Counted from the stretch's first letter, positions 4,131 through 35,940 are shown. The stretch is DNA of 64,000 bases from IMGVR_UViG_3300023179_000009:248001-312000; one strand, 5' to 3'. The notes: generated by a model not told the origin, from the sequence alone. A program made the numbers and translations.

Positions 4131-5192
4131 ATGTGGGGCGATGCTTTTTGTGCTTTTCCATTTAATCGACTAAGAATAACATCCGAAGGCAATGCTTCTT
4201 TTTGTTGTTTTATGAGACCAGACCCTCTCAAAGCAGAGGAGGACGCTTATATCGGTAATGTTTTGAATAATACATTTGATGAGGTTTGGTTTGGAGAAAT
4301 TGCCGAGGAAATAAGACACGAAACACTCAAGGGCAATTTGCACAAAAAATGCCAATGTCCCGGTTGTCCTTATTTGCCGCTTAAAAAACCATACCCGATT
4401 CAGAACTTTATTTACAATGAGTATCCTAATTTCTTAGAAATAGATCTTCCGAATACCCATTGTAATGTTGGCGGATTAAAACCTCACCCGGAACACTCTC
4501 CAGCTTGCGTTATGTGTGAGCGATCAAGTCCAGTTTTCCGCCCAGAGAAAAATCATCTTTTTGAAGTTCTTGAAAAAATTAAGCACATCGTTCCCAACCT
4601 TTATCAAATACACGTTCAGGGAATAGCGGAACCTTTCTATCAAACAAGACAAGATGGATTTTTGTTGTTTGAAATTATGGATATTTTAGAATATGATAAC
4701 CATGCAGAGCAAATTACTTTAAGCATCACTACAAATGGAACCTTATTAAAACAAAATGTACGTGAGCAATATCTTAGGCGTGCTCCAAATTCTATTACTA
4801 ATTTTTCAATAGACGCCGCTACACCAGAAACTTTTAAAGCTATAAGAATATTTGATTGTTTTGATAAAGTTTTGGAGAATATGTATGCTTTTGATCAAGA
4901 GCGTGTTCGTGAGAAGCAGTTCTTGAAAATTCACAATAATATTAACATAATGAATGTGCATGAGGTTGTTGAGATGTGTCGAATTGCACACAAAGCAAGA
5001 GCGGAATTTGTTGAATTTAATCCAACAAATGGATTTAATCATAAGATTCTTGTGAACAAAAAAAATTGTGGTTTGTTTGCAAAAGCTCAACAAGATATTA
5101 TTGAAGAGTGCAATAAACTAGGACAGCCGGTTAACTTTATAAGACCACTTGACTTAAACTTAACCGACCAGTTGATACAACTCACTTTATGA
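4131..5192 (+). CDS. SPASM/twitch + radical SAM domain protein (paralog 1)
   Basis: N-terminal C.FPF..L.I...G....CC...IGN...W...C..C SPASM-like block; CNVGG-x-ACVMC (CX14CX2C); GIAEPF, TTNGTLL, FSIDAATPETF. Confidence 0.75.
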   Translation: MWGDAFCAFPFNRLRITSEGNASFCCFMRPDPLKAEEDAYIGNVLNNTFDEVWFGEIAEEIRHETLKGNLHKKCQCPGCPYLPLKKPYPIQNFIYNEYPNFLEIDLPNTHCNVGGLKPHPEHSPACVMCERSSPVFRPEKNHLFEVLEKIKHIVPNLYQIHVQGIAEPFYQTRQDGFLLFEIMDILEYDNHAEQITLSITTNGTLLKQNVREQYLRRAPNSITNFSIDAATPETFKAIRIFDCFDKVLENMYAFDQERVREKQFLKIHNNINIMNVHEVVEMCRIAHKARAEFVEFNPTNGFNHKILVNKKNCGLFAKAQQDIIEECNKLGQPVNFIRPLDLNLTDQLIQLTL

Positions 5193-5960
5193 TTTCTTTT
5201 TGTGTTTGAATTTTTTTTCAAATTTTAATAGTTTATACTGGAGGCAATTCCAAGGAATATGTGGTTGAATTATATCTATAAAACAATCATAGTCTATAGA
5301 TCCGATGTAGATCACATATTGAATTTGATTATTTTTGTTTTTTCTGCTCGGTACCGGACGAGTGTCTAGTTTCAAATCTTTTTTTATAAGACCAACTAAT
5401 CGTTCTACCTCAATTTTACTAAAATTGTGGGTACAAATAAATGCGTTGTTGCTTTTCCCAATGTATCCATCGTCACAGAACCAATAAGCTAATGTTAGAG
5501 GCGTTATGTTCAATTTTTCGGGCAATATCTTTTTTTCTTTTACATACCATTGATTTCTTAGTTTGGTAAAAATAGGATGACAACAGGTATGGTATAACAT
5601 TGTTTGTTCAACATAATTTTTCCCTTTCAAACTTCTGTTTTTTTCGTACATTTTTAGCGAGTTAGAGTAGGGTTGTAGTTCATCGTGCAAACTTTGTTGA
5701 TATTCTTGCATTGCCATCTTTTGACCTTTTTGAAAACGAGAATTGTGCGTTTCTTTTTTTGGTCGATCTAAATGAGCGTCACCTAATAATGAACCGACAA
5801 TAATCTCCATCTGCCTATCATTTATTTCAGGCAAACAAGGCACAAGACCTTTGCTTTTGCATTCCCTTGAGCAATTTTTTCTTAAATGAAACTCGGAGGG
5901 TTTTATTTCAAATATTTTACCACAAAATTGACAGGCTTTTTGTATTTTACATTTTTTCAT
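5187..5960 (-). CDS. LAGLIDADG homing endonuclease (two-motif type) with N-terminal Zn-finger
   Basis: IIVGSLLGDAHL and LAYWFCDDG motifs, CTHNFS..EV..L; N-terminal CQFCG...CSREC. Confidence 0.85.
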   Translation of the reverse strand: MKKCKIQKACQFCGKIFEIKPSEFHLRKNCSRECKSKGLVPCLPEINDRQMEIIVGSLLGDAHLDRPKKETHNSRFQKGQKMAMQEYQQSLHDELQPYSNSLKMYEKNRSLKGKNYVEQTMLYHTCCHPIFTKLRNQWYVKEKKILPEKLNITPLTLAYWFCDDGYIGKSNNAFICTHNFSKIEVERLVGLIKKDLKLDTRPVPSRKNKNNQIQYVIYIGSIDYDCFIDIIQPHIPWNCLQYKLLKFEKKFKHKKKS

Positions 5961-6007
5961 AATTATATGTATTCACATAGTTGTGTTTTTCTTAACAACA
6001 TAAACAC

Positions 6008-6190
6008 GTTGAATTTAATCCAACAAATGGATTTAATCACAAAATTTTAGTTAATGAAAAAAATTGTGGTTTGTTTGCAAAAGCTCAACAAGATATTATT
6101 GAAGAGTGCAATAAACTAGGACAGCCGGTTAACTTTTTGCGTCCTTTAGATTTAGGTTATACCGAACGGCTGATACAGTTGACTATATAG
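6008..6190 (+). pseudogene. orphaned duplicate of the last 60 codons of the radical SAM gene 4131..5192
   Basis: 183-bp copy of 5010..5192; translates VEFNPTNGFNHKILVNEKNCGLFAKAQQDIIEECNKLGQPVNFLRPLDLGYTERLIQLTI*; identical blocks alternate with recoded blocks. Confidence 0.9.
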
Positions 6191-9875: not shown

Positions 9876-10955
9876 ATGTTAAAAAACCCAGATAACCAAT
9901 CAACCAATTTTGCTTTTTGCTCCAATCCTTTCACGAAAGTGATATTAACCAGTTGGGGCGAAGTTTCTATGTGCTGCCATCAACATACCCAACTGGGAAA
10001 ATTAGACGAAAAAACCGATATTTTGGATATTTGGAATAATTTTGTTGCAAAAGAAATAAGAGAATTTACAAAAAATGGAAAATTGCACCCAGTTTGTTTT
10101 TCTTGGAATGTTTGTCCATTTATCACTAAGTTAAAAAAACCTTTTTATTTTGAATCTTATAAAAATTCTCGTTTTCCAATATTTTTAGAAATATGTTTGC
10201 CGGATAAGCATTGCAATATCGGCGGAGAAACACCTGATGAGGATAACCCAGCTTGCATTATGTGTGCAAGAAACTTTCACAAGCCAGACCAGCCGGATAT
10301 GACAGATTTTTTATGCGAAAAAGCAAAATCATTAATGCCCTATTTAAGATTTTTAAGTGTTTTGGGCATAGCAGAACCTTTTTGGAAGGATGCAGTTTTT
10401 AGAATTTTTGAAAAACTAGATTTTAAAAAATATAAAAATGAAATAGAATTTACAACAAATACTAATGGAACTTGTTTGAACGAGAAAACATCATTAAAGT
10501 TTTTTAATTCAACTACTAAATCTAATATCTCTTGGTCATTAGACGCTGCCGATCCAATTACTTTTAAAAAAATTAGAAGACTTGATTTGTATGACCAAGT
10601 AATAGAGAATTTAAAAAGATGGATTAAAATGAGAGAAAAATTTGGTGGCAAAAAACAACACAGAGTTTCTATTTACAACAACATAAACATGTTAAACGTT
10701 CACGAAATGTCTAAAATGGTGGAAACAGCACACAAGTTAAATGTTGAAAAACTAACAATGATCCCCACCTCAGACCAATTAGGCATTGTAAAATTGGGAG
10801 ATTTGTTGCTCAATAAAAAAAACGTTGATCTTTTTAAACAAGAGTCTGAGAAAGCGACGAGTCTGGCAAAAAAATTAGGTGTAGAATTAGAATATCCTAA
10901 ATGTTTTGATCTGGTTCCTCCCACTGTTGAGCAGTTGGTTCAATTAAGCATTTGA
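9876..10955 (+). CDS. SPASM/twitch + radical SAM domain protein (paralog 3)
   Basis: CSNPF...GEVSMCC; CNIGG-x-ACIMC (CX13CX2C); GIAEPF, NTNGT, SLDAA; C-terminal LVQLSI. Confidence 0.75.
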   Translation: MLKNPDNQSTNFAFCSNPFTKVILTSWGEVSMCCHQHTQLGKLDEKTDILDIWNNFVAKEIREFTKNGKLHPVCFSWNVCPFITKLKKPFYFESYKNSRFPIFLEICLPDKHCNIGGETPDEDNPACIMCARNFHKPDQPDMTDFLCEKAKSLMPYLRFLSVLGIAEPFWKDAVFRIFEKLDFKKYKNEIEFTTNTNGTCLNEKTSLKFFNSTTKSNISWSLDAADPITFKKIRRLDLYDQVIENLKRWIKMREKFGGKKQHRVSIYNNINMLNVHEMSKMVETAHKLNVEKLTMIPTSDQLGIVKLGDLLLNKKNVDLFKQESEKATSLAKKLGVELEYPKCFDLVPPTVEQLVQLSI

Positions 10956-26841: not shown

Positions 26842-27996
26842 ATGGAATATTATCATTGGCAAACTATGGTTGATGAACATCGTTGGATTCATCGACAAGA
26901 CAAAAAGAGAGTTCGTAATCTGACTGATGCTCAGATTAGGGATATTGAAATGGAGAATATATTGACTACTCCATTTAAAAAAGAGTCTAATCGTTGGCGC
27001 AGAGTGATTCGTTTGACAGGAGAAAATGTTTGGATCAATGCTGGCAAGCCATACTACAACATTCACCCTCAAATGGTTAGGTCGCTTTGCAATACAAATT
27101 TAGACAAGATACCAGCAAATTTGATCGAAGTTCCGGCGGGTCTGGAGGCAGTAGTTTTTAGATTTGCCGAGGATGTTCCGATTCGCCATATCTCAAATGA
27201 TGGATTTCACACTGTGGCAGCAGATGAGGTGCATCATTCTCCCATTTATTGTAGATCAGTTTTGTTTGGAAAAATAAAAAACGATCATTCAAAAAATGTA
27301 GCTGAAAATATAAAGAAAACCGCAGGAGATTTTTTTCAATTAATGAACATGCCTTCTTTAAGCGACAGTGTAAAATCTGTTATAGATATGGCCTCTGAAG
27401 GCTTTTATAAAGATGTTGATGACTTTATGATAATGTGTGTTGACGAAGGCTTTAGAGTTAAAGATCGTGGCGTTGATAGAAGTTTGTGTAATTTGATCAC
27501 TATTAATTGCAAACATGGTCAAAGCGTCTCAGAAGCAATACAGACTACCGTAGAACAAGCCTCCGCTGGTGAACAGGCTGTTATGGTTACTATGGGTAAT
27601 CGTTTATCAAATCTAATTCGTGTGATCGTATCTGCTGGTTTTTTGGCAAATTGTCCTGAAGACGATTTGGTTGTCCCAGATATTTTGAGTGCTGATAAAC
27701 AAAGTTTCAAAGATGCCTCTCAACGTGGAGATTCGGCGGCAATCCAAACTATTGTTGAGCGTGCAAAAAGGCGTGGCAAAAACGGTTACAATATCGGCAC
27801 ATCAGAGATGTTCGTCTCAGAGAACGAATCTGAACATCAAAAACAATACGATAGCACCGGCAAACAATTAAGTTTTAGCCACTTACGTGGTGGTCATCCT
27901 CATGCCGTCAGATATGGTGAGGGCAAAAATAAAGTAAAAATTAAATGGTTTAGACCAACTAGAGTCAGGCCGGATCTGCCATTTAAAAATGTTTAA
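26842..27996 (+). CDS. hypothetical protein
   Basis: 384-aa ORF, C-terminal HLRGGH..VRYG.G....KWF.P motif. Confidence 0.6.
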   Translation: MEYYHWQTMVDEHRWIHRQDKKRVRNLTDAQIRDIEMENILTTPFKKESNRWRRVIRLTGENVWINAGKPYYNIHPQMVRSLCNTNLDKIPANLIEVPAGLEAVVFRFAEDVPIRHISNDGFHTVAADEVHHSPIYCRSVLFGKIKNDHSKNVAENIKKTAGDFFQLMNMPSLSDSVKSVIDMASEGFYKDVDDFMIMCVDEGFRVKDRGVDRSLCNLITINCKHGQSVSEAIQTTVEQASAGEQAVMVTMGNRLSNLIRVIVSAGFLANCPEDDLVVPDILSADKQSFKDASQRGDSAAIQTIVERAKRRGKNGYNIGTSEMFVSENESEHQKQYDSTGKQLSFSHLRGGHPHAVRYGEGKNKVKIKWFRPTRVRPDLPFKNV

Positions 27997-28067
27997 TTAT
28001 TTTTAAAACCTTGACGATCACATTTTCTAACGTATCATGATTGTGTCACACATGAAGGGATTTCGCA

Positions 28068-29111
28068 GTGGACACTCAAGAAGATTTTGACTTTCTTAAA
28101 GCAATAGAAAACACAGAGCCCGACTTTGTTCGGGCATACCTTGGAGGCATTAAGTCAGATATGTCTAAGACAAATGTTCAACTTACCGTTCGTCAGTGCG
28201 CATCTTTACTTGGCGTTTGCCAGAATACTGTTCTCAACCACATCAAAGCAAACAAATTAAAAGCCAAACTTGTTGAAGGCCAGTGGTTTATACAAGAAAG
28301 CGATTTTGATTCATACAGGTCGTCTATTGTTGTTTCAAAAGGAAAAGATAGTCGTTCGATTATAAGATTTTCTAAAAAATCAAAAGAAACTAAAGTTTCT
28401 TCAAACAAAGAAGAGGTTCATGTCATGGATGAAAAAATTCGTTATCAAAAAGCAACCTCAAGAACTGTCACAGACTTTCTTCACGATTGGCACCGCAACA
28501 AGTCGTCCGGATTTTCCTTGTTGACTATTTGCAGAGACTTTAACCAAGTTTCAGCAAATCCAACCAATGAAAATCAGATGAGCGGGATTTTGTCATCGCT
28601 TAGAAACAAGGGAATAGTTATCCGCAAAGGCAAGGGCATTTACCAAGTTAGCCCTTCAATTGTCGGAGAAATAATTGAAGATCAATCGCATTCAACTACA
28701 GATACCACTCCAGAAACACAGGCAACTTTAATCGACACAGACATTGAGCAAATTCGCACTTCTTTGAAAAAGACTGAGCGAATGGCTGTTGAGGCTTTTA
28801 TAAGAAATCATGCTTCTCCCGGTGTTGATTTTTATTTTACAATCGCTGATGTTGCTCGTGAGTATCCGCATCTTGATCGCAACAAACTCGGCAAAGCTTG
28901 CGTTAACATGTGCCAAACCGGCAAACTTGTAAAGAGCCAAGGTTTGGGAGAATATGTTAAGCAAACTAAAGAAAACCATGTGCAAGAACGAAATCAGAGT
29001 GTCAAGCAACCTTCTACCGATAGCGTTCTTGAAAAAATTAATCGAATCATCAACTCTGACTTTGAAGATAAATTTAAAGAGGAACTTATAAAAGGAATTA
29101 TGCAAAATTAA
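28068..29111 (+). CDS. multi-HTH DNA-binding protein (excisionase-like HTH at N-terminus)
   Basis: LTVRQCASLLGVCQNTVLNHIKANKLKA..V.GQWFI; later wHTH-like LSSLRNKGIV...GKGIY; upstream TTGACG-16-TATCAT (28011-28038). Confidence 0.65.
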   Translation: MDTQEDFDFLKAIENTEPDFVRAYLGGIKSDMSKTNVQLTVRQCASLLGVCQNTVLNHIKANKLKAKLVEGQWFIQESDFDSYRSSIVVSKGKDSRSIIRFSKKSKETKVSSNKEEVHVMDEKIRYQKATSRTVTDFLHDWHRNKSSGFSLLTICRDFNQVSANPTNENQMSGILSSLRNKGIVIRKGKGIYQVSPSIVGEIIEDQSHSTTDTTPETQATLIDTDIEQIRTSLKKTERMAVEAFIRNHASPGVDFYFTIADVAREYPHLDRNKLGKACVNMCQTGKLVKSQGLGEYVKQTKENHVQERNQSVKQPSTDSVLEKINRIINSDFEDKFKEELIKGIMQN

Positions 29112-29117
29112 TTTTTC

Positions 29118-29154
29118 ATGGAAAAAAATCTTTTACCAAAAGAAGAACTAAATC
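29118..29154 (+). repeat. left copy of 37-bp direct repeat (mscL 5' end) flanking the cas-CRISPR cassette
   Basis: ATGGAAAAAAATCTTTTACCAAAAGAAGAACTAAATC, identical to 31770..31806. Confidence 0.95.
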
Positions 29155-29155
29155 T

Positions 29156-30781
29156 ATGTTAGAACAAGAAGAAAATAATTGTGTTGTTATTAAAGTTCCA
29201 TTGATTTGTAACCAAAAGCAAATTAAATTGCTTAAAAGTAGATTTAATTCTTCTAGAGTTTTTTATAATTCTTGTTTAGCAGAGTGCGAAAGAAGAAGGA
29301 AAATTCTTGTCGTTCATCCTAATCGTATCGAAGCCAATAGAATATACAAAGAATTAAAAGAAAAAGACAAACAAGTTAAAGAAAAAAAAATTACTAGAAG
29401 TTCTTATGACTTTAAAAAGAACAAAGAACTCTATAGTTCTCTTTATCGAAAATCTGAGAGGGAGACGGGTTTTTATTTAAGATCTAGTGCCACAAATGAT
29501 ATGACAAATTCTTTAGAACAATGGGTTTCGAATGTAAGAAATGGAACCAATATTGAAAAAGAGTTGGATAGCCACACCTGTATGACTTTAATGGATCGAG
29601 CATTTAAAGCATCTAAAAGAGTTTTAAATGCTCGATGGGTATTTAATAAGAAAAAAAACACTTACATAAAACCATCGGTTCAGTTTAAGAGTGTAAAAAA
29701 ACCAATCCTTAGCATTTCTAGCAAAAGCCAAAAATCTTCTCTTAAATTTTTATTAGAAAGCAAAACAATTCGGGTTCCTCATGTCGTTTGGACAATTAAC
29801 AAAAAAGCAATATGGCCTATTTTAAATTTGGACCCAATTGATCCTTATCATAACTTTTTAATTGAAAACTACCACAAAGTGGGTCATATTAAATTGTGTC
29901 GTGAAGAAATTAAAGGAAAGTGGGTTTATTCTATGCAGGCTACTTGTAGCATAGATTCAATGAGTAAATTTTATTTGGGAGTTAAACCAAAATATTTAGG
30001 TGAAGGTGTTTGTGGAGTTGATATTGGAGCAAGCGACTTTGCCTTTTCAGCACCGAACCACTCGGAAATTACAAAATTATTTCCGGAGTTTGATTTAGGT
30101 GTTGAGAAAAAGTTAAAGCAACTACACAAACAAAATTCTCGTATGCTCAGACAGAACAACCCAAACAATTTTGAGCCTGATACTTGGGAAAAAAATCCCA
30201 ATGGCAAACTAATTAAGAAATTTGGATCACAAAAAAAGGGTTGCAAAAATTTTATTAGCAAAAGGCACAAAAAAGTGCTACTTCAGATGAAGGAAATTTA
30301 TAGAAAACTCAAAGAAAGTCGTAGCATTTCTCATAAAAAAGCGGCAATTCGCTTACGTTCAAAAGCCGACAATCTAAGAATGGAAGATCTCAACTATTTT
30401 TCGTGGCAAAAAGGCGGCATGGGCAAATCATCCCAAATACGCTCTCCCGGACTATTTAGTAAAACTTTAGAGAACACATTCAAAAAAACCGGCGGTAAGG
30501 TTGAAAAAATTGATCCTTTTAAATCTTGTCTTTCGCAAATTTGTCCCAATTGCGGAAGCAAAAAAAAGAAAGAAAGAAGTCAGGATTGGCACGAGTGCGA
30601 AGAGTGCGGTTACGGTAAGAAATTTCCAGTTCAAAGAGACTTGAATTCTGCTATGCTTGCGTGTACAGTTGATTTGAAAACTCAAACTGTCGATGTGGAA
30701 GAAGCCAAAAAACTTCTTCGGGATAGAGGACCGATCCTGCGGACGACATCGGCTAGTTTTAAAAAAGGTGCGAAGAACTAG
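29156..30781 (+). CDS. compact type V CRISPR effector (TnpB/Cas12-like RuvC nuclease, 541 aa)
   Basis: TnpB-like N-terminus (R.FYN.CL), RuvC-I GVDIG (D289), RuvC-II MEDL (E410), Zn finger CPNC...CEEC, RuvC-III QRDLNSA (D495); adjacent to a CRISPR array. Confidence 0.85.
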   Translation: MLEQEENNCVVIKVPLICNQKQIKLLKSRFNSSRVFYNSCLAECERRRKILVVHPNRIEANRIYKELKEKDKQVKEKKITRSSYDFKKNKELYSSLYRKSERETGFYLRSSATNDMTNSLEQWVSNVRNGTNIEKELDSHTCMTLMDRAFKASKRVLNARWVFNKKKNTYIKPSVQFKSVKKPILSISSKSQKSSLKFLLESKTIRVPHVVWTINKKAIWPILNLDPIDPYHNFLIENYHKVGHIKLCREEIKGKWVYSMQATCSIDSMSKFYLGVKPKYLGEGVCGVDIGASDFAFSAPNHSEITKLFPEFDLGVEKKLKQLHKQNSRMLRQNNPNNFEPDTWEKNPNGKLIKKFGSQKKGCKNFISKRHKKVLLQMKEIYRKLKESRSISHKKAAIRLRSKADNLRMEDLNYFSWQKGGMGKSSQIRSPGLFSKTLENTFKKTGGKVEKIDPFKSCLSQICPNCGSKKKKERSQDWHECEECGYGKKFPVQRDLNSAMLACTVDLKTQTVDVEEAKKLLRDRGPILRTTSASFKKGAKN

Positions 30782-30980
30782 TACTCACTCTAATTGAAAA
30801 ATTAGTTTGCCGAAAAATCTACTTTTTAGAAAAACACCTAAAGAGTCAGAGTACCTCGTCCGTGAAACTACGAGCGATTTAGAATGACAGCCCTCATCGG
30901 AATAGTTTTAAATCGTCGTGGTCTCGTCTTTTGTTGCGAGAGGTACGGTGGCGTTAAAAACCGCCGTACCTCTCGTTTTT
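30782..30980 (+). ncRNA. putative tracrRNA (5' end uncertain)
   Basis: Anti-repeat CTCGTCTTTTGTT (30923-30935) pairs with repeat AACAAAAGATGAG (one G-U). TGACAGCCCTCATC (30885-30898) is partly complementary to the repeat 3' end. Long stem at about 30868-30885/30905-30921; ends in a terminator. Confidence 0.7.
30937..30980 (+). terminator. intrinsic terminator
   Basis: 15-bp stem CGAGAGGTACGGTGG / CCGCCGTACCTCTCG, 9-nt loop, followed by TTTTT. Confidence 0.8.
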
Positions 30981-31073
30981 ACTTAAATACTGTGTTGTCA
31001 ATGATTTACAGAACTCTTATTTTGTTTTTTGATATTTGATGGATCTAAATTTTAACAACCTCTCGCAAAGGTC

Positions 31074-31102
31074 TTGTTTTTTGTTGTGGTTTTTTGTATA
31101 AT
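31074..31102 (+). promoter_or_regulatory. sigma70-like promoter in CRISPR leader
   Basis: TTGTTT (31074-79) - 17 bp - TATAAT (31097-31102), 11 bp before repeat 1. Confidence 0.6.
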
Positions 31103-31113
31103 TTTAATGTGCT

Positions 31114-31772
31114 ATTGCAGTACTTAAAACAAAAGATGAGTATGTCAAGTGGTCTCTAGGGCATCGTTGGCGTCTCGGTAAACCAAATTGCAGTACTTAA
31201 AACAAAAGATGAGTATGTCAAGAGGGCATCGTTGGCGTCTCGGTAAACCAAATTGCAGTACTTAAAACAAAAGATGAGTATGTCAAGGACATTGAGAAGG
31301 TACTCGGAATCTTGTTCGGGGGATTGCAGTACTTAAAACAAAAGATGAGTATGTCAAGGTGCTGCTCAGGCGTTAGTGGAGGTTTGTTGGTAGCCAATTG
31401 CAGTACTTAAAACAAAAGATGAGTATGTCAAGAATTAGCGGCAGTACGAGCCACCGACCATCAGCAGATTGCAGTACTTAAAACAAAAGATGAGTATGTC
31501 AAGGAAACCCAAGTCCATAGACGCAAGAGGCAAAAACGGATTGCAGTACTTAAAACAAAAGATGAGTATGTCAAGTACCGATGGGCTACCAAAAACATCG
31601 CCAGGGCGGCAAAATTGCAGTACTTAAAACAAAAGATGAGTATGTCAAGATGACCAAGGCAAAAACCCGCCATTGCAGTACTTAAAACAAAAGATGAGTA
31701 TGTCAAGGTCAAGTGGCGTATTATTAGACAACGTGAGTTCTCATTGGATTTCAGTGCTTAAAACAAAAGATG
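31114..31772 (+). CRISPR. CRISPR array, 9 identical 36-bp repeats + 1 degenerate truncated repeat, 9 spacers
   Basis: Repeat ATTGCAGTACTTAAAACAAAAGATGAGTATGTCAAG at 31114, 31187, 31252, 31323, 31397, 31468, 31540, 31614, 31672. Partial ATTTCAGTGCTTAAAACAAAAGATG at 31748. Spacer lengths 37, 29, 35, 38, 35, 36, 38, 22, 40. Orientation taken from the leader, the degenerate trailer repeat and the anti-repeat. Confidence 0.97.
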
Positions 31773-32195
31773 GAAAAAAATCTTTTACCAAAAGAAGAAC
31801 TAAATCGTTATAAGCAATTTGCTTTTAAAGACGATATGTTCAAATTGGCTATAGGTTTTATTTTAGGCAATTCTTTCAATAATGTGGTTGGTGGAATTAG
31901 CAGTTTTCTAATTATGCCGGTGGTTAATTTTTTAACTACACAAACAGGAGAGAATTGGAGAACTATTGTTTTTTCGCCAGTGAGTGGTTTGGATTTTGAA
32001 CTAGGAAAACTTTTAGGAACTTTTGTAGATTTTTTACTAACATCTATTGTTCTTTATGTAATTTACGTTAAAATTTTAGGGTCAATAAAAAAACAAGAAG
32101 AAGATTGTAATTTGAAACAATGCAATCGTTGTCTAAGTTTAATTCATGTTGACGCAACAAGATGCAAGTTCTGCACCAGCCCAATTAAAAAATAA
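31770..32195 (+). CDS. mscL: large-conductance mechanosensitive channel MscL family protein
   Basis: YKQFAFK.D...LAIGFILGNSF..VV......IMP, G.LLG..VDFL; C-terminal C..C...I...ATRC.FCTS Zn ribbon; the ATG is supplied by the truncated last CRISPR repeat. Confidence 0.8.
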   Translation: MEKNLLPKEELNRYKQFAFKDDMFKLAIGFILGNSFNNVVGGISSFLIMPVVNFLTTQTGENWRTIVFSPVSGLDFELGKLLGTFVDFLLTSIVLYVIYVKILGSIKKQEEDCNLKQCNRCLSLIHVDATRCKFCTSPIKK

Positions 32196-32196
32196 C

Positions 32197-33210
32197 ATGA
32201 GAAAATTAGCATCTATACAAATTGTTAATTCAATTAAGCCTATCCCTAATGCAGATGCTATTGAATGTGTCGGTGTTCTTGGTTGGGAGTGTGTTTCAAA
32301 AAAAGGTGAATTCAAAGTTGGTGATAAATGTGTTTATTTTGAAATCGACAGTTTGCTACCAGAAACAGAAACATTCGAGTTTTTAAGAAAAAATTGCTAT
32401 AGAAAAGATCTTAAAAAGTTTAGATTAAAAACCGCTAAATTGCGTGGTCAACTTAGCCAAGGTCTCGCCCTGCCTTTGAGTTTATTCCCCGATCTATACC
32501 ACCTAGAGGCGTGTGCGGATGTCACCGATCTGCTGAATGTAGAAAAATATGAGCCTCCGATTCCGGCTCAAATTTCGGGCGATGCAAAGTCTTTTAGTTG
32601 GCCTATTGCGAAAACAGATGAGGTCAGAGTTCAGACCGATGAGGGCTTGAACTTGTTGGGTGCCCTTCACGGCAAGCCTTATTATTTAAGCCTTAAATTG
32701 GACGGAACGAGTTGTTCGTTTATCATAGATCCGTCAAACAAAGAATTTCATGTTTGTGGAAGAAATTATAGTTATAAAAACAAACCAAATCATAGTTTTT
32801 GGACAATAAATGAACGATACCAAGTAGAAGAACGATTGCGTTCAATTGGTGAAAATTTAGCCTTGCAGGGAGAATGTGTTGGCCCAGGTATTCAACAAAA
32901 TAAACTTGGATTACCTAACATTGATTATTACATATTTAATGTAGTTGATACTTCTACTCGCAAAAGACTATCTCTTGAAGATTCTTTGAGTGTCGTAAAA
33001 GAACTCAAAATGAATTTTGTTCCAATATTGGAAAAAGGCGATTCATTCAAATACAATATGGAACAGTTGCTTGAAAAAGCAAAAGGAAAGTATCGTGAAC
33101 ATTTTGAAAATGCAAAGCAGCATCAAGAGCGTGAAGGAATAGTGATTCGAAGTTTGTGCGGATCAGTTAGTTTCAAAGCCATAAATAACGAATTTCTCCT
33201 ACAAGAATAA
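32197..33210 (+). CDS. RNA ligase (ATP), DRB0094/Rnl2-like family
   Basis: MRKLASIQ..IKPIPNADAIE OB-like N-terminus, LRGQLSQGL, KTDE.R.Q, KLDGTS, QGE..GPGIQ.N, REGIV, FKAIN. Confidence 0.9.
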   Translation: MRKLASIQIVNSIKPIPNADAIECVGVLGWECVSKKGEFKVGDKCVYFEIDSLLPETETFEFLRKNCYRKDLKKFRLKTAKLRGQLSQGLALPLSLFPDLYHLEACADVTDLLNVEKYEPPIPAQISGDAKSFSWPIAKTDEVRVQTDEGLNLLGALHGKPYYLSLKLDGTSCSFIIDPSNKEFHVCGRNYSYKNKPNHSFWTINERYQVEERLRSIGENLALQGECVGPGIQQNKLGLPNIDYYIFNVVDTSTRKRLSLEDSLSVVKELKMNFVPILEKGDSFKYNMEQLLEKAKGKYREHFENAKQHQEREGIVIRSLCGSVSFKAINNEFLLQE

Positions 33211-35338: not shown

Positions 35339-35940
35339 ATTGGGCGTCAGATGAATAAGCACAAAATTATTTCGCAGGATGCGGAACTGGTCTCCATCAG
35401 TGTGGGGAAAGTTGACGGTAAACCTCGGTTGTTTTTAACTTTTAGGTTTGATAAAAATGATTTTTCTACTCAAACTATAAGTTTAAAATCGAGACAAGCG
35501 GTTCGTTTAAAAAACGATATTAATGATTTGGCAAATAAAAGTCCTTTATTTCAAAAGGTTCTAAGTAAAGCCAAAAATTACTATAGTTCTTTTGAACGAA
35601 TATTTTTTGATCGGCCCCCGGTATAAAATTTGTTATGAGAAAAACAGTTTCTAAATTAACAAGTAAAGAAATATCTTTTCTAATGAGGTTGTATAACGAA
35701 CAGTCTCTAGGAATTGATAAACTTCCTTACACCCCAGAGTTTGATAATATTGTTTTTCAATTCCATCAAGTTTTCGGAAATGAAAACGGACATAGAGAAT
35801 TGTGGCACACTCTTATCAATCTTAGAAAACAAAAAAAACTTTTGAGAAAAACTCGAAGTCGATGATGATTGATACCAACTAGGACTTTGCAAAAAGGCAT
35901 GGATTTCCGTGCCTTTTTGTTTTTATAGAAAGGATTCACT

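What the first reader, a model, noticed from the sequence alone, without database searches (positions are those of the whole stretch)
29118..31806. The cas-tracr-CRISPR unit is bracketed by an exact 37-bp duplication of the mscL start: an inserted cassette wired into the local operon
Seen: 29118-29154 equals 31770-31806. The left copy forms a 14-codon leader ORF (MEKNLLPKEELNLC*, stop ending at 29162) that overlaps the nuclease ATG at 29156. On the right, the last CRISPR repeat is truncated exactly at its internal ATG, which becomes the mscL start codon. No transposase or integrase is adjacent. Inference: the module inserted at the 5' end of mscL while preserving it, uses the original mscL translation start by coupling, and could be excised by recombination between the repeats. 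This resembles homing-endonuclease-style spread of an RNA-guided nuclease cassette, and the same logic appears at the LAGLIDADG locus in this window.
Basis: partly seen in the sequence, partly recalled or inferred. Interest (0 to 1): 0.78.

Follow-up and report, generated by a model that had tools for sequence, protein, structure and literature searches.

The report
Swappable Cas12 cassette in jumbo phage
A 2.65-kb unit holding a small RNA-guided nuclease, its helper RNA and a CRISPR array sits in a 459-kb freshwater phage between two exact 37-bp copies of the start of a channel gene, and a 97-98% identical phage has the same site empty with one copy, so it is a real insertion/deletion cassette, though probably not one that spreads by cutting the empty site itself.

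Summary
Window 29118-29154 equals 31770-31806 (37/37; none expected by chance). The two copies bracket a 541-aa TnpB-like Cas12 nuclease, a conserved tracr-like RNA region and a nine-repeat CRISPR array. Two independent assemblies reproduce the structure.

The predicted empty allele exists. A 1,678-bp contig from another lake sample (L028) reads HTH gene, TTTTTC, then mscL with one 37-mer and no cassette. It is 97.0% and 98.4% identical to the window's flanks.

Related phages carry the same cassette at two other junctions (L004, L007) without any duplication. The HTH gene is a resident gene that is also present where the cassette is absent.

The 459-kb genome encodes no integrase, resolvase, TnpA or Cas1.

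RNA-guided homing is not supported. No spacer matches the empty site. The terminal repeat lacks its conserved 3' handle. Because of the duplication, every word of 38 nt or less in the empty allele is also present in the carrier.

My best reading is that the cassette was captured from a related co-infecting phage by microhomology-mediated recombination. The duplication is a by-product that keeps mscL intact, supplies a leader ORF for cas12, and allows precise loss. Spacers point to competition between related phages.

The parts
26842..27996 (+). 384-aa gene labelled AcrVA2-like (PF26125) in precomputed annotation. It is the upstream neighbour and not part of the cassette.
   Evidence: Precomputed Pfam. 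My own hmmscan gave no hit. In the near clade (L003, L018-L023) this gene abuts mscL directly.
28011..28038 (+). Sigma-70-like promoter match (TTGACG-16-TATCAT) ahead of the HTH gene. It is the possible start of the transcript that would carry the HTH gene, the leader ORF and cas12.
   Evidence: 10 of 12 positions. This is a consensus match only.
28068..29111 (+). 347-aa HTH_17 (excisionase/MerR-type HTH) protein gene. It is a resident gene of this phage group and the left neighbour of the insertion site.
   Evidence: Pfam PF12728. Homologs sit at the syntenic position with the cassette in L004 and without it in L014, L015 and L028.
29118..29154 (+). Left copy of the 37-bp duplication (mscL codons 1-12 plus 1 nt), preceded by TTTTTC exactly as in the empty allele.
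29118..29162 (+). 14-codon leader ORF (MEKNLLPKEELNLC*) whose stop lies just after the nuclease ATG. It is a candidate for termination-reinitiation coupling.
   Evidence: SD-bearing leaders are present in L004 (AAGGAG) and L007 (GAGGA) but absent here.
29156..30781 (+). 541-aa TnpB-like Cas12 nuclease with an intact RuvC triad and a CxxC..CxxC zinc ribbon.
   Evidence: PF07282 at 5.9e-9. NF040570 at 77 bits. D289, D495 and four Cys are conserved in a 27-sequence alignment. AF2 pLDDT 89.6. Foldseek top hits are Cas12f, TnpB and Cas12p.
30838..31075 (+). Conserved non-coding tracr-like region. It includes hairpin 30937-30975 followed by a T-run, and an anti-repeat at 31013-31028 (14 of 16 complementary to the repeat).
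   Evidence: 89% column identity among window, L004 and L007, higher than in the coding part. Two compensatory pairs in the hairpin. Inverted repeats I9-I18. No Rfam family matches.
31097..31102 (+). TATAAT box 12 nt before the first repeat. It is a candidate array promoter and is conserved in L007.
   Evidence: Read from the sequence. The role is inferred.
31114..31707 (+). CRISPR array of nine identical 36-nt repeats with spacers of 22-40 nt at 42-57% GC. Spacers 1 and 2 share a 29-nt core.
   Evidence: Foreign contigs in runs X6 and X1 match spacers 1, 5 and 9.
31748..31772 (+). Degenerate terminal repeat (2 mismatches) that lacks the last 11 nt (AGTATGTCAAG) of the repeat. Its ATG is the mscL start codon.
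   Evidence: The missing 3' handle is the repeat part that is conserved in L004, L007 and a 37%-identical relative, L036.
31770..31806 (+). Right copy of the 37-bp duplication, which is the true 5' end of mscL.
31770..32195 (+). Intact mscL (141 aa) carrying a C-terminal CxxC..CxxC tail.
   Evidence: PF01741 at 1.4e-16. 93-97% identical to cassette-less relatives.

Best explanation
The 2,652-bp segment (one 37-mer plus cas12, the tracr region and the CRISPR array) is an accessory cassette in a hypervariable island of a family of freshwater jumbo phages. Three parts of the account follow.

Shown: the cassette is present or absent among near-identical strains, and it occupies different gene junctions in relatives.

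Inferred origin: this lineage captured the cassette from a co-infecting relative by illegitimate, microhomology-mediated recombination or template switching. The two genomes were aligned at the shared HTH gene. Copying left the recipient after mscL nt 37, joining next to the cas12 ATG (possible ATC microhomology). It returned from the last repeat at the mscL ATG (ATG microhomology), 37 nt upstream of where it left. That offset produced the duplication.

Inferred consequences: the arrangement was kept because it leaves mscL whole. It replaces cas12's own ribosome-binding leader with the mscL start as a 14-codon leader ORF that can couple translation. The two copies are also a substrate for precise loss or re-gain by homologous recombination.

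Function: an adaptation-less type V CRISPR system used against other mobile DNA, including related phages.
For: Empty allele:
- L028 reads HTH, TTTTTC, then mscL with a single 37-mer.
- It is 96.96% and 98.43% identical to the flanks, and sequencing depth over the cassette in that run is zero.

Independent assemblies of the filled allele.

Cassette elsewhere:
- L004 has HTH, cassette, then DUF6915. L007 has DUF6915, a 190-aa gene, then the cassette.
- L015 and L014 have the HTH gene without the cassette.
- L004's cassette has no flanking duplication.

No recombinase, TnpA or Cas1 in the genome.

Junctions: they share only 3 nt or less with the target.

TnpB comparison: a TnpB insertion in relatives is clean, without duplication.

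Nuclease and RNA: the nuclease is intact and the tracr region is conserved, with compensatory changes.

Targets:
- Foreign contigs in the same lakes match spacers 1, 5 and 9.
- L004 spacers 4 and 5 equal L004's own genes except at third codon positions, so they derive from close relatives.
Against: - The direction of the event is not resolved. L028 could be the ancestral state or a secondary loss.
- The HTH-cas12 adjacency in both L004 and the window could mean the cassette is ancestral next to the HTH gene and the 37-mer arrived later.
- Cas12 divergence between window and L004 (79% nt) is similar to that of core genes (67-75%), which is compatible with vertical descent.
- The donor and the template-switch steps are inferred, not observed.
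- No expression data exist. The listed metatranscriptome runs held none of the sampled words.
- The window's spacer targets could not be identified in IMG/VR or GTDB genomes.
Confidence: 0.6

Rival explanations
1. RNA-guided homing. The cassette's nuclease, guided by an RNA that reads into the mscL start, cuts cassette-less alleles in co-infecting phages. Repair from the carrier then copies the cassette in, as with TnpB or homing endonucleases.
For: - The nuclease has TnpB ancestry, and four more TnpB genes lie in the genome.
- The 37-mer has the modal spacer length of 35-38 nt.
- In the empty allele the 37-mer follows TTC. The three protospacers seen in run X6 follow TAC, TTC and TAC.
- The terminal repeat is followed by the 37-mer, which is the position a guide would take.
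- Arrays of this cassette family do target close relatives.
Against: - No spacer matches the empty site or any relative.
- The terminal unit lacks the 11-nt 3' handle that is conserved across the family.
- The left copy keeps TTC plus the full 37-mer, and the right copy keeps the 37-mer plus mscL. No word of 38 nt or less is therefore unique to the empty allele, and a guide would cut the carrier as well.
- IMG/VR holds no array with the 37-mer as a spacer.
- The PAM rests on three flanks only.
Confidence: 0.08
2. Site-specific integration. The 37-mer is an att core, and the cassette is a small integrative element moved as a circle by a recombinase acting in trans, perhaps the neighbouring HTH_17 protein.
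For: - Identical direct repeats flank the insert, and there is a single copy in the empty allele, which is the attL/attR/attB pattern.
- The HTH_17 domain is of the excisionase type.
- The slot just downstream of the HTH gene holds different cargo in different relatives.
Against: - The 459-kb genome, estimated 91% complete, has no tyrosine or serine recombinase.
- The HTH protein shows no catalytic domain and is conserved in cassette-less phages.
- L004's cassette has no flanking repeat.
- L007 carries the cassette away from the HTH gene.
Confidence: 0.06
3. Ancestral cassette with later tinkering. The cassette has sat directly after the HTH gene since the common ancestor with L004. The 37-mer was copied in later between the HTH gene and cas12, and cassette-less strains are deletions.
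For: - The HTH-cas12 adjacency and large-scale synteny are shared with L004.
- Cas12 divergence is similar to that of core genes.
- Run X5, a strain with about 5% divergence in the HTH gene, already has the 37-mer-cas12 junction.
Against: - It needs extra steps: an ectopic copy of exactly the mscL start replacing the native leader.
- The nearest clade (L003, L018-L023; at least 7 samples) lacks both the HTH gene and the cassette.
- L007 shows the cassette at another junction.
Confidence: 0.15
4. Assembly artefact: the second copy or the cassette placement is a misjoin.
For: k-mer contigs break at the repeat.
Against: Two other assemblies from other samples span both copies at 100% and 99.92% identity without gaps. 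A diverged strain in run X5 carries the same left junction.
Confidence: 0.01

Closest known systems
Type V-F CRISPR-Cas12f (Cas14) loci with tracrRNA
   Same: A compact TnpB-like RuvC nuclease with a zinc ribbon. A tracr-like RNA is encoded between the nuclease gene and the array, with the array downstream. Foldseek top hits are Cas12f structures.
   Different: - Only 12-15% identity to solved Cas12f, and no PDB hit with the single sequence.
- No cas1, cas2 or cas4 anywhere in the genome.
- It is phage-borne.
- The family profile hits TnpB and LaTranC before Cas12f.
TnpB/omega-RNA elements of IS200/IS605 and their guide-directed homing (Meers et al. 2023, listed in the references of PMC11656645; the mechanism as stated here is from my own knowledge)
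   Same: A related nuclease, and a guide-like flank directly after the last RNA scaffold unit. TnpB-only elements are polymorphic in these same phages.
   Different: - It has a CRISPR array and a separate tracr region instead of a single omega RNA.
- There is no TnpA.
- IS200/IS605 elements insert without duplication, as seen in L018 versus L019, whereas here 37 bp are duplicated.
- The duplication defeats discrimination between the empty and filled sites.
Phage-encoded CRISPR systems held in a swappable accessory or anti-defence locus (ICP1 type I-F; adaptation-less systems of jumbo phages), as reviewed in PMC11656645
   Same: Present in only some strains at a fixed variable locus. Jumbo-phage systems often lack an adaptation module. 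Spacers aim at competing elements.
   Different: A different CRISPR type. Here the cassette borders are defined to the base, by a duplication of the neighbouring gene's start.
Free-standing homing endonuclease genes of T4-like phages (my own knowledge)
   Same: A nuclease gene cassette lies between conserved genes, is present or absent among close relatives, and has no recombinase.
   Different: Homing does not duplicate the target, and the insert destroys or separates the recognition site. Here the site is duplicated and no guide against it exists.
Campbell-type or att-site integration that rebuilds the target gene's end
   Same: The insert is flanked by identical direct repeats, there is one copy in the empty allele, and the target gene stays intact.
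   Different: The genome has no integrase or resolvase. No circular form has been observed.
TranC (transposon-CRISPR intermediate) nucleases, e.g. LaTranC (PDB 9jfq/9jfo)
   Same: The family profile matches LaTranC at E about 3e-18. Both are TnpB-like in size and both use tracr plus CRISPR RNA.
   Different: The homology is remote. I did not test dual guide use or membership by phylogeny.

Membership tests
Type V CRISPR-Cas (Cas12 effector with array) | Single effector with a split RuvC domain (D..E..D) and a zinc-ribbon/TNB insertion | tested here: met
   PF07282. D289 and D495 are invariant or nearly so, and C463/C466/C481/C484 are conserved. The RuvC-II glutamate was read from the consensus motif, not from the list of conserved columns. 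AF2 model pLDDT 89.6 with Cas12f/TnpB fold matches at probability 1.00.
Type V CRISPR-Cas (Cas12 effector with array) | Adjacent array of regular repeats with unique spacers | tested here: met
   Nine identical 36-nt repeats with 22-40-nt spacers. Homologous arrays with different spacers occur in L004 and L007.
Type V CRISPR-Cas (Cas12 effector with array) | Spacers derived from foreign DNA | tested here: met
   Foreign contigs in runs X6 and X1 match spacers 1, 5 and 9. L004 spacers 4 and 5 come from a close relative's orthologs.
Type V CRISPR-Cas (Cas12 effector with array) | RNA-guided DNA cleavage with a PAM | not testable with these tools
   There is only a tentative 5' T(A/T)C motif from three protospacer flanks.
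Cas12f (subtype V-F) | Sequence or phylogenetic membership in the Cas12f clade | tested here: inconclusive
   Only the domain-level PF07282 hit. Best structural matches include CnCas12f1, Al3Cas12f, TnpB and Cas12p at TM 0.50-0.55 and 12-15% identity. The profile hits TnpB and TranC first.
Cas12f (subtype V-F) | tracrRNA with an anti-repeat encoded next to the array | tested here: inconclusive
   A conserved 240-nt non-coding region with 2 compensatory pairs and a 14-of-16 anti-repeat. Only 3 sequences were available, and there is no RNA evidence.
TnpB / IS200-IS605 (OMEGA) element | TnpB-family protein above the curated threshold | tested here: not met
   NF040570 scored 77.2 bits against a cut-off of 100.
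TnpB / IS200-IS605 (OMEGA) element | TnpA partner or transposon ends; insertion without target duplication | tested here: not met
   No Y1 TnpA in the genome. There is a 37-bp duplication here, whereas the TnpB insertion in L018 is clean.
Homing nuclease cassette | Presence/absence polymorphism at one site among close relatives | tested here: met
   L028 versus the window.
Homing nuclease cassette | The nuclease recognises the empty site, and the carrier is immune because the insert disrupts it | tested here: not met
   No spacer matches. The duplication keeps every word of 38 nt or less from the empty allele in the carrier, including TTC plus the 37-mer.
Site-specific integrative element | attL and attR identical to a single attB | tested here: met
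Site-specific integrative element | A tyrosine or serine recombinase available | tested here: not met
   No PF00589 or PF00239 match in the 458,813-bp genome, while the control genomes do match.

The most novel reading that the evidence does not exclude
The 37-mer is a former spacer/protospacer pair. A cassette-bearing phage held a spacer against the TTC-flanked mscL start of a rival. Cas12 cleavage, followed by spacer-protospacer recombination, then carried the whole cas12-tracr-array unit into the rival's genome. Afterwards the self-targeting unit was disarmed by loss of 14 nt between two AAGATG words, which gives exactly the truncated terminal repeat seen. That would be CRISPR-guided self-insertion, a living intermediate between TnpB homing and CRISPR immunity.
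Probability: 0.07. Interest if true: 0.9.

Novelty: new variant of a known kind. Interest (0 to 1): 0.6.

Why it matters
This case shows, base by base, how a complete miniature RNA-guided nuclease system behaves as a promoter-less gene cassette. It is swapped among related jumbo phages without any recombinase of its own. It borrows a neighbour's translation start while rebuilding that neighbour.

The filled and empty alleles occur in nature at 97-98% identity. That makes the capture, loss and expression logic testable.

It also gives a clear reason why a target duplication is incompatible with guide-directed homing. This bears on how CRISPR type V systems left their transposon past.

The nuclease family is far from every solved Cas12 or TnpB. 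It comes with a conserved tracr region and could be of use as a compact editor.

Tried and rejected
- Searched IMG/VR for relatives of the nuclease and of the HTH protein: none found.
- The one metagenome scan, with MscL as query, returned only the window's own contig and a 40% relative.
- Exact scans for spacers 1, 5 and 9 and for one protospacer flank in IMG/VR, and for spacers 1 and 5 in GTDB genomes: no hits. The window's targets stay unidentified.
- The 37-mer core occurs in IMG/VR only in L003's contig, so no array uses it as a spacer.
- Window spacers have no DNA match (up to 30% mismatches) or peptide match in the window's own genome or in fetched relatives.
- GenBank phages hold no close relative of the nuclease; all hits are below 30% identity and annotated as transposases.
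- L003's 177-kb record has neither the HTH gene nor the nuclease.
- L004's cassette has no bracketing repeat, and the genome's other TnpB genes have none.
- Rooting the gain-or-loss question from Logan contig variants was abandoned: there are three taxa, no usable outgroup, and recombination is likely.
- The contig for P0052 was too short to show context.
- Rejected: transposition with a staggered cut (37 bp is far beyond known target duplications, and there is no transposase), and Cas1-Cas2-type integration (no Cas1).
Full report
**The observation**

The window is part of a 458,813-bp IMG/VR virus record estimated to be 91% complete. Positions 29118-29154 and 31770-31806 are identical over 37 nt, in direct orientation and 2,652 bp apart. 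Allowing three mismatches finds no further copy, and shuffles give none.

Between the copies lie:
- a 541-aa ORF at 29156-30781;
- about 330 nt of non-coding DNA;
- nine identical 36-nt repeats at 31114-31707.

The right copy is the start of a 141-aa MscL gene (PF01741). The left copy opens a 14-codon ORF whose stop lies two bases after the nuclease ATG. The last repeat unit follows the repeat consensus up to its internal ATG and then continues as mscL.

The structure is not an assembly artefact. A 428-kb contig from another assembly is 100% identical over 13 kb across both copies. A contig from a different freshwater sample is 99.92% identical without gaps. Logan contigs (k=31) stop inside the repeat, as a 37-bp repeat would make them do.

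**The parts**

The nuclease:
- It carries the Cas12f1-like TNB domain and an IS605 OrfB-type N-terminal helix-turn-helix.
- It scores 77 bits on NCBI's TnpB model, below the cut-off of 100.
- It has 874 relatives among 50%-identity cluster representatives, the best at 35-38% identity.
- In a 27-sequence alignment the RuvC aspartates D289 and D495 and four zinc-ribbon cysteines are conserved.
- The AlphaFold model is confident (pLDDT 89.6).
- The model matches Cas12f, TnpB and Cas12p structures at TM 0.50-0.55 but only 12-15% identity.
- The single sequence finds nothing in the PDB.
- The family profile finds TnpB and LaTranC first.

The non-coding region is more conserved among the three known cassettes (89% column identity) than the coding part (79-83%). 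It has two compensatory pairs in a long hairpin and contains a 14-of-16 anti-repeat. No Rfam family matches it.

The genome has no Cas1. This is therefore an adaptation-less type V system with a tracr-like RNA.

**The relatives**

The nuclease has only two close relatives in 5.8 billion proteins.

- L004 (75% identical protein) has the order AAA-ATPase gene, a 109-aa gene, HTH gene, cas12, tracr, six-repeat array, DUF6915, a 190-aa gene, a 58-aa gene, NYN. It is syntenic with the window on the large scale.
- L007 (82% identical) has the cassette after DUF6915 and the 190-aa gene instead.

The 347-aa HTH_17 gene to the left of the window's cassette is a resident gene of the group:
- L015 has HTH directly followed by DUF6915.
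- L014 has a methyltransferase gene between them.

The closest clade (L003, L018-L023; 82-88% nt identity; at least seven samples) has the AcrVA2-like gene abutting mscL. It has neither the HTH gene nor the cassette. The region between the AAA-ATPase gene and the NYN gene is therefore a hypervariable island where genes are exchanged at gene borders.

**The empty allele**

I laid Logan contigs of four lake metagenomes on window 27400-32600.
- In run X6, one 1,678-bp contig runs along the HTH gene to 29117 and continues at 31770. It skips exactly 2,652 bp, with 37 letters fitting both sides. Depth over the cassette is zero while the flanks stand at about 8.
- I recovered that contig as L028. It reads HTH stop, TTTTTC, ATG of mscL, with one 37-mer. 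It is 96.96% identical to the window on the left and 98.43% on the right.
- A third strain, in run X5, carries the cassette with the same left junction.

The cas12-tracr-CRISPR unit is a discrete indel bracketed by the duplication. Whether L028 is the state before insertion or the product of recombination between the two copies cannot be told from these data.

**How it moves**

The whole genome lacks tyrosine and serine recombinases, Y1 TnpA and Cas1, although controls for these families match.

It holds four other TnpB genes, none flanked by repeats. A polymorphic TnpB insertion in relatives (L018 versus L019) is a clean 1,301-bp insertion without duplication. L004's cassette has no flanking repeat. 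The 37-bp duplication is thus peculiar to this one insertion rather than a signature of the element.

The two junctions share at most three bases with the target. ATG is shared between the repeat and mscL. ATC may be shared at the cas12 side, by comparison with L007's leader.

The most economical account is two microhomology-mediated joins or template switches with a cassette-bearing relative aligned at the homologous HTH gene. The return point lay 37 nt upstream of the departure point. This also explains why the cassette again lies just after the HTH gene, as it does in L004. These steps are inferred.

**Why not RNA-guided homing**

Several points argue against it.
- None of the nine spacers matches the empty site, the window's own genome or any fetched relative, at the DNA or the peptide level.
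- The terminal unit lacks the last 11 nt of the repeat. That part is conserved in L004, L007 and a 37%-identical relative in another phage, L036.
- The left copy keeps TTC plus the whole 37-mer, and the right copy keeps the 37-mer plus the rest of mscL. Every word of 38 nt or less in the empty allele therefore also exists in the carrier, and a guide against the empty site would cut the carrier too.

Some features keep a small door open.
- The 37-mer has the modal spacer length.
- It follows TTC, and the three protospacers seen in run X6 follow TAC, TTC and TAC.
- A full repeat followed by the 37-mer would differ from the observed sequence only by 14 nt lying between two AAGATG words.
- IMG/VR holds no array with the 37-mer as a spacer.

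**Wiring and function**

All genes here are on one strand. A promoter-like site precedes the HTH gene, and no plus-strand terminator was called in this stretch.

L004 and L007 have Shine-Dalgarno-bearing leaders before cas12. In the window that leader is replaced by the mscL start, six bases after the HTH stop, forming the leader ORF. Coupled translation is plausible but untested. mscL would be read from transcripts that run through the array. No RNA data were available.

As to purpose:
- Spacers are 42-57% GC in a 35% GC genome.
- Foreign contigs in the same lakes match three of them.
- L004's spacers 4 and 5 equal L004's own genes except at third codon positions and encode the same peptides. 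They were therefore taken from close relatives.

This fits the known use of phage-borne CRISPR in competition between viruses, and the strain-variable placement known from ICP1 (PMC11656645).

**Verdict**

- The interpretation as an inserted, operon-wired cassette with an empty allele is supported.
- The homing mechanism is not supported.

It is a new variant of a known kind: a phage-borne, adaptation-less type V system carrying a base-precise duplication that is not known as a mark of CRISPR locus mobility.

Noticed in passing
window 5010-6188: A LAGLIDADG_2 endonuclease gene (5190-5960, minus strand) is bracketed by a 181-nt direct repeat (5010-5190 and 6008-6188). The repeat is 85% identical with an 80-nt exact stretch. 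The gene lies between two ORFs that each carry SPASM and radical SAM domains. Its repeats are much longer and diverged.
   Followed up: partly
window 26842-27996: The gene just upstream of the HTH gene is labelled AcrVA2-like (PF26125) in precomputed annotation. A possible anti-Cas12a gene therefore sits two genes from the phage's own Cas12-like nuclease. My own hmmscan found no family for it.
   Followed up: no
L004 1150-1186 and 1731-1769; L004 array 10205-10314: L004 spacers 4 and 5 match L004's own genes except at third codon positions (9 of 9 and 5 of 5 differences, apart from the last two letters, CT, which I assigned to the next repeat). They encode identical peptides. The spacers therefore come from a GC-richer close relative.
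   Followed up: yes
G000:C1 at about 25.9, 189.9, 232.8 and 456.7 kb; L018 2168-3468: The genome has four further TnpB genes (387-423 aa) with no TnpA anywhere. In relatives, a 392-aa TnpB element is present in L018, L021 and L023 but absent in L019, L020 and L022, as a clean 1,301-bp insertion.
   Followed up: partly
window 31150-31251: Spacers 1 and 2 share the same 29-nt core, and spacer 1 has 8 extra bases. The first two repeat-spacer units are thus a near duplicate.
   Followed up: no
window 31702-31713: The last six bases of the ninth repeat (GTCAAG) are tandemly repeated. Run X5 shows a further GTCAAG inserted here. The X6 protospacer for spacer 9 differs at two of the first four bases if the spacer starts at 31714. 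That would fit an escape variant.
   Followed up: partly
L007 1290-1330 (window 29381-29389): L007's nuclease gene is split by one extra A in an A-run (10 A versus 9 in the window). This could be a real frameshift or a sequencing error.
   Followed up: no
L003 6428-6731: L003 has about 300 bp, with a 121-aa minus-strand ORF, between mscL and the RNA ligase gene. The window lacks this segment. L003 also has about 1 kb that the window lacks at window position 35611-35634.
   Followed up: no
L004 array 9953-10348: Four of L004's spacers end in a shared CGCCCG(A/C)AACT-like motif, so its repeat unit aligns over 46 nt rather than 36. I have no explanation for this.
   Followed up: no
window 27953 and 31017 (run X1): A low-depth (2.8) contig in run X1 joins 27953 to 31017 with 14 unrelated letters in between (table 5c). 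It may be noise, or a relative in which the array leader follows the AcrVA2-like gene.
   Followed up: no
G000:C1:342532-358273 (outside the window): A family of about 40-nt GC-rich hairpin repeats (TGATACCAACTAGGGGG...CCCCCTAG) recurs between genes over 16 kb of the genome.
   Followed up: no
L036 5144-5281: A 37%-identical nuclease in another phage is followed by three irregularly spaced copies of TGCGAGTATGRRTTGGTCAAG. This motif shares the GAGTATG..TCAAG handle with the window's repeat.
   Followed up: partly
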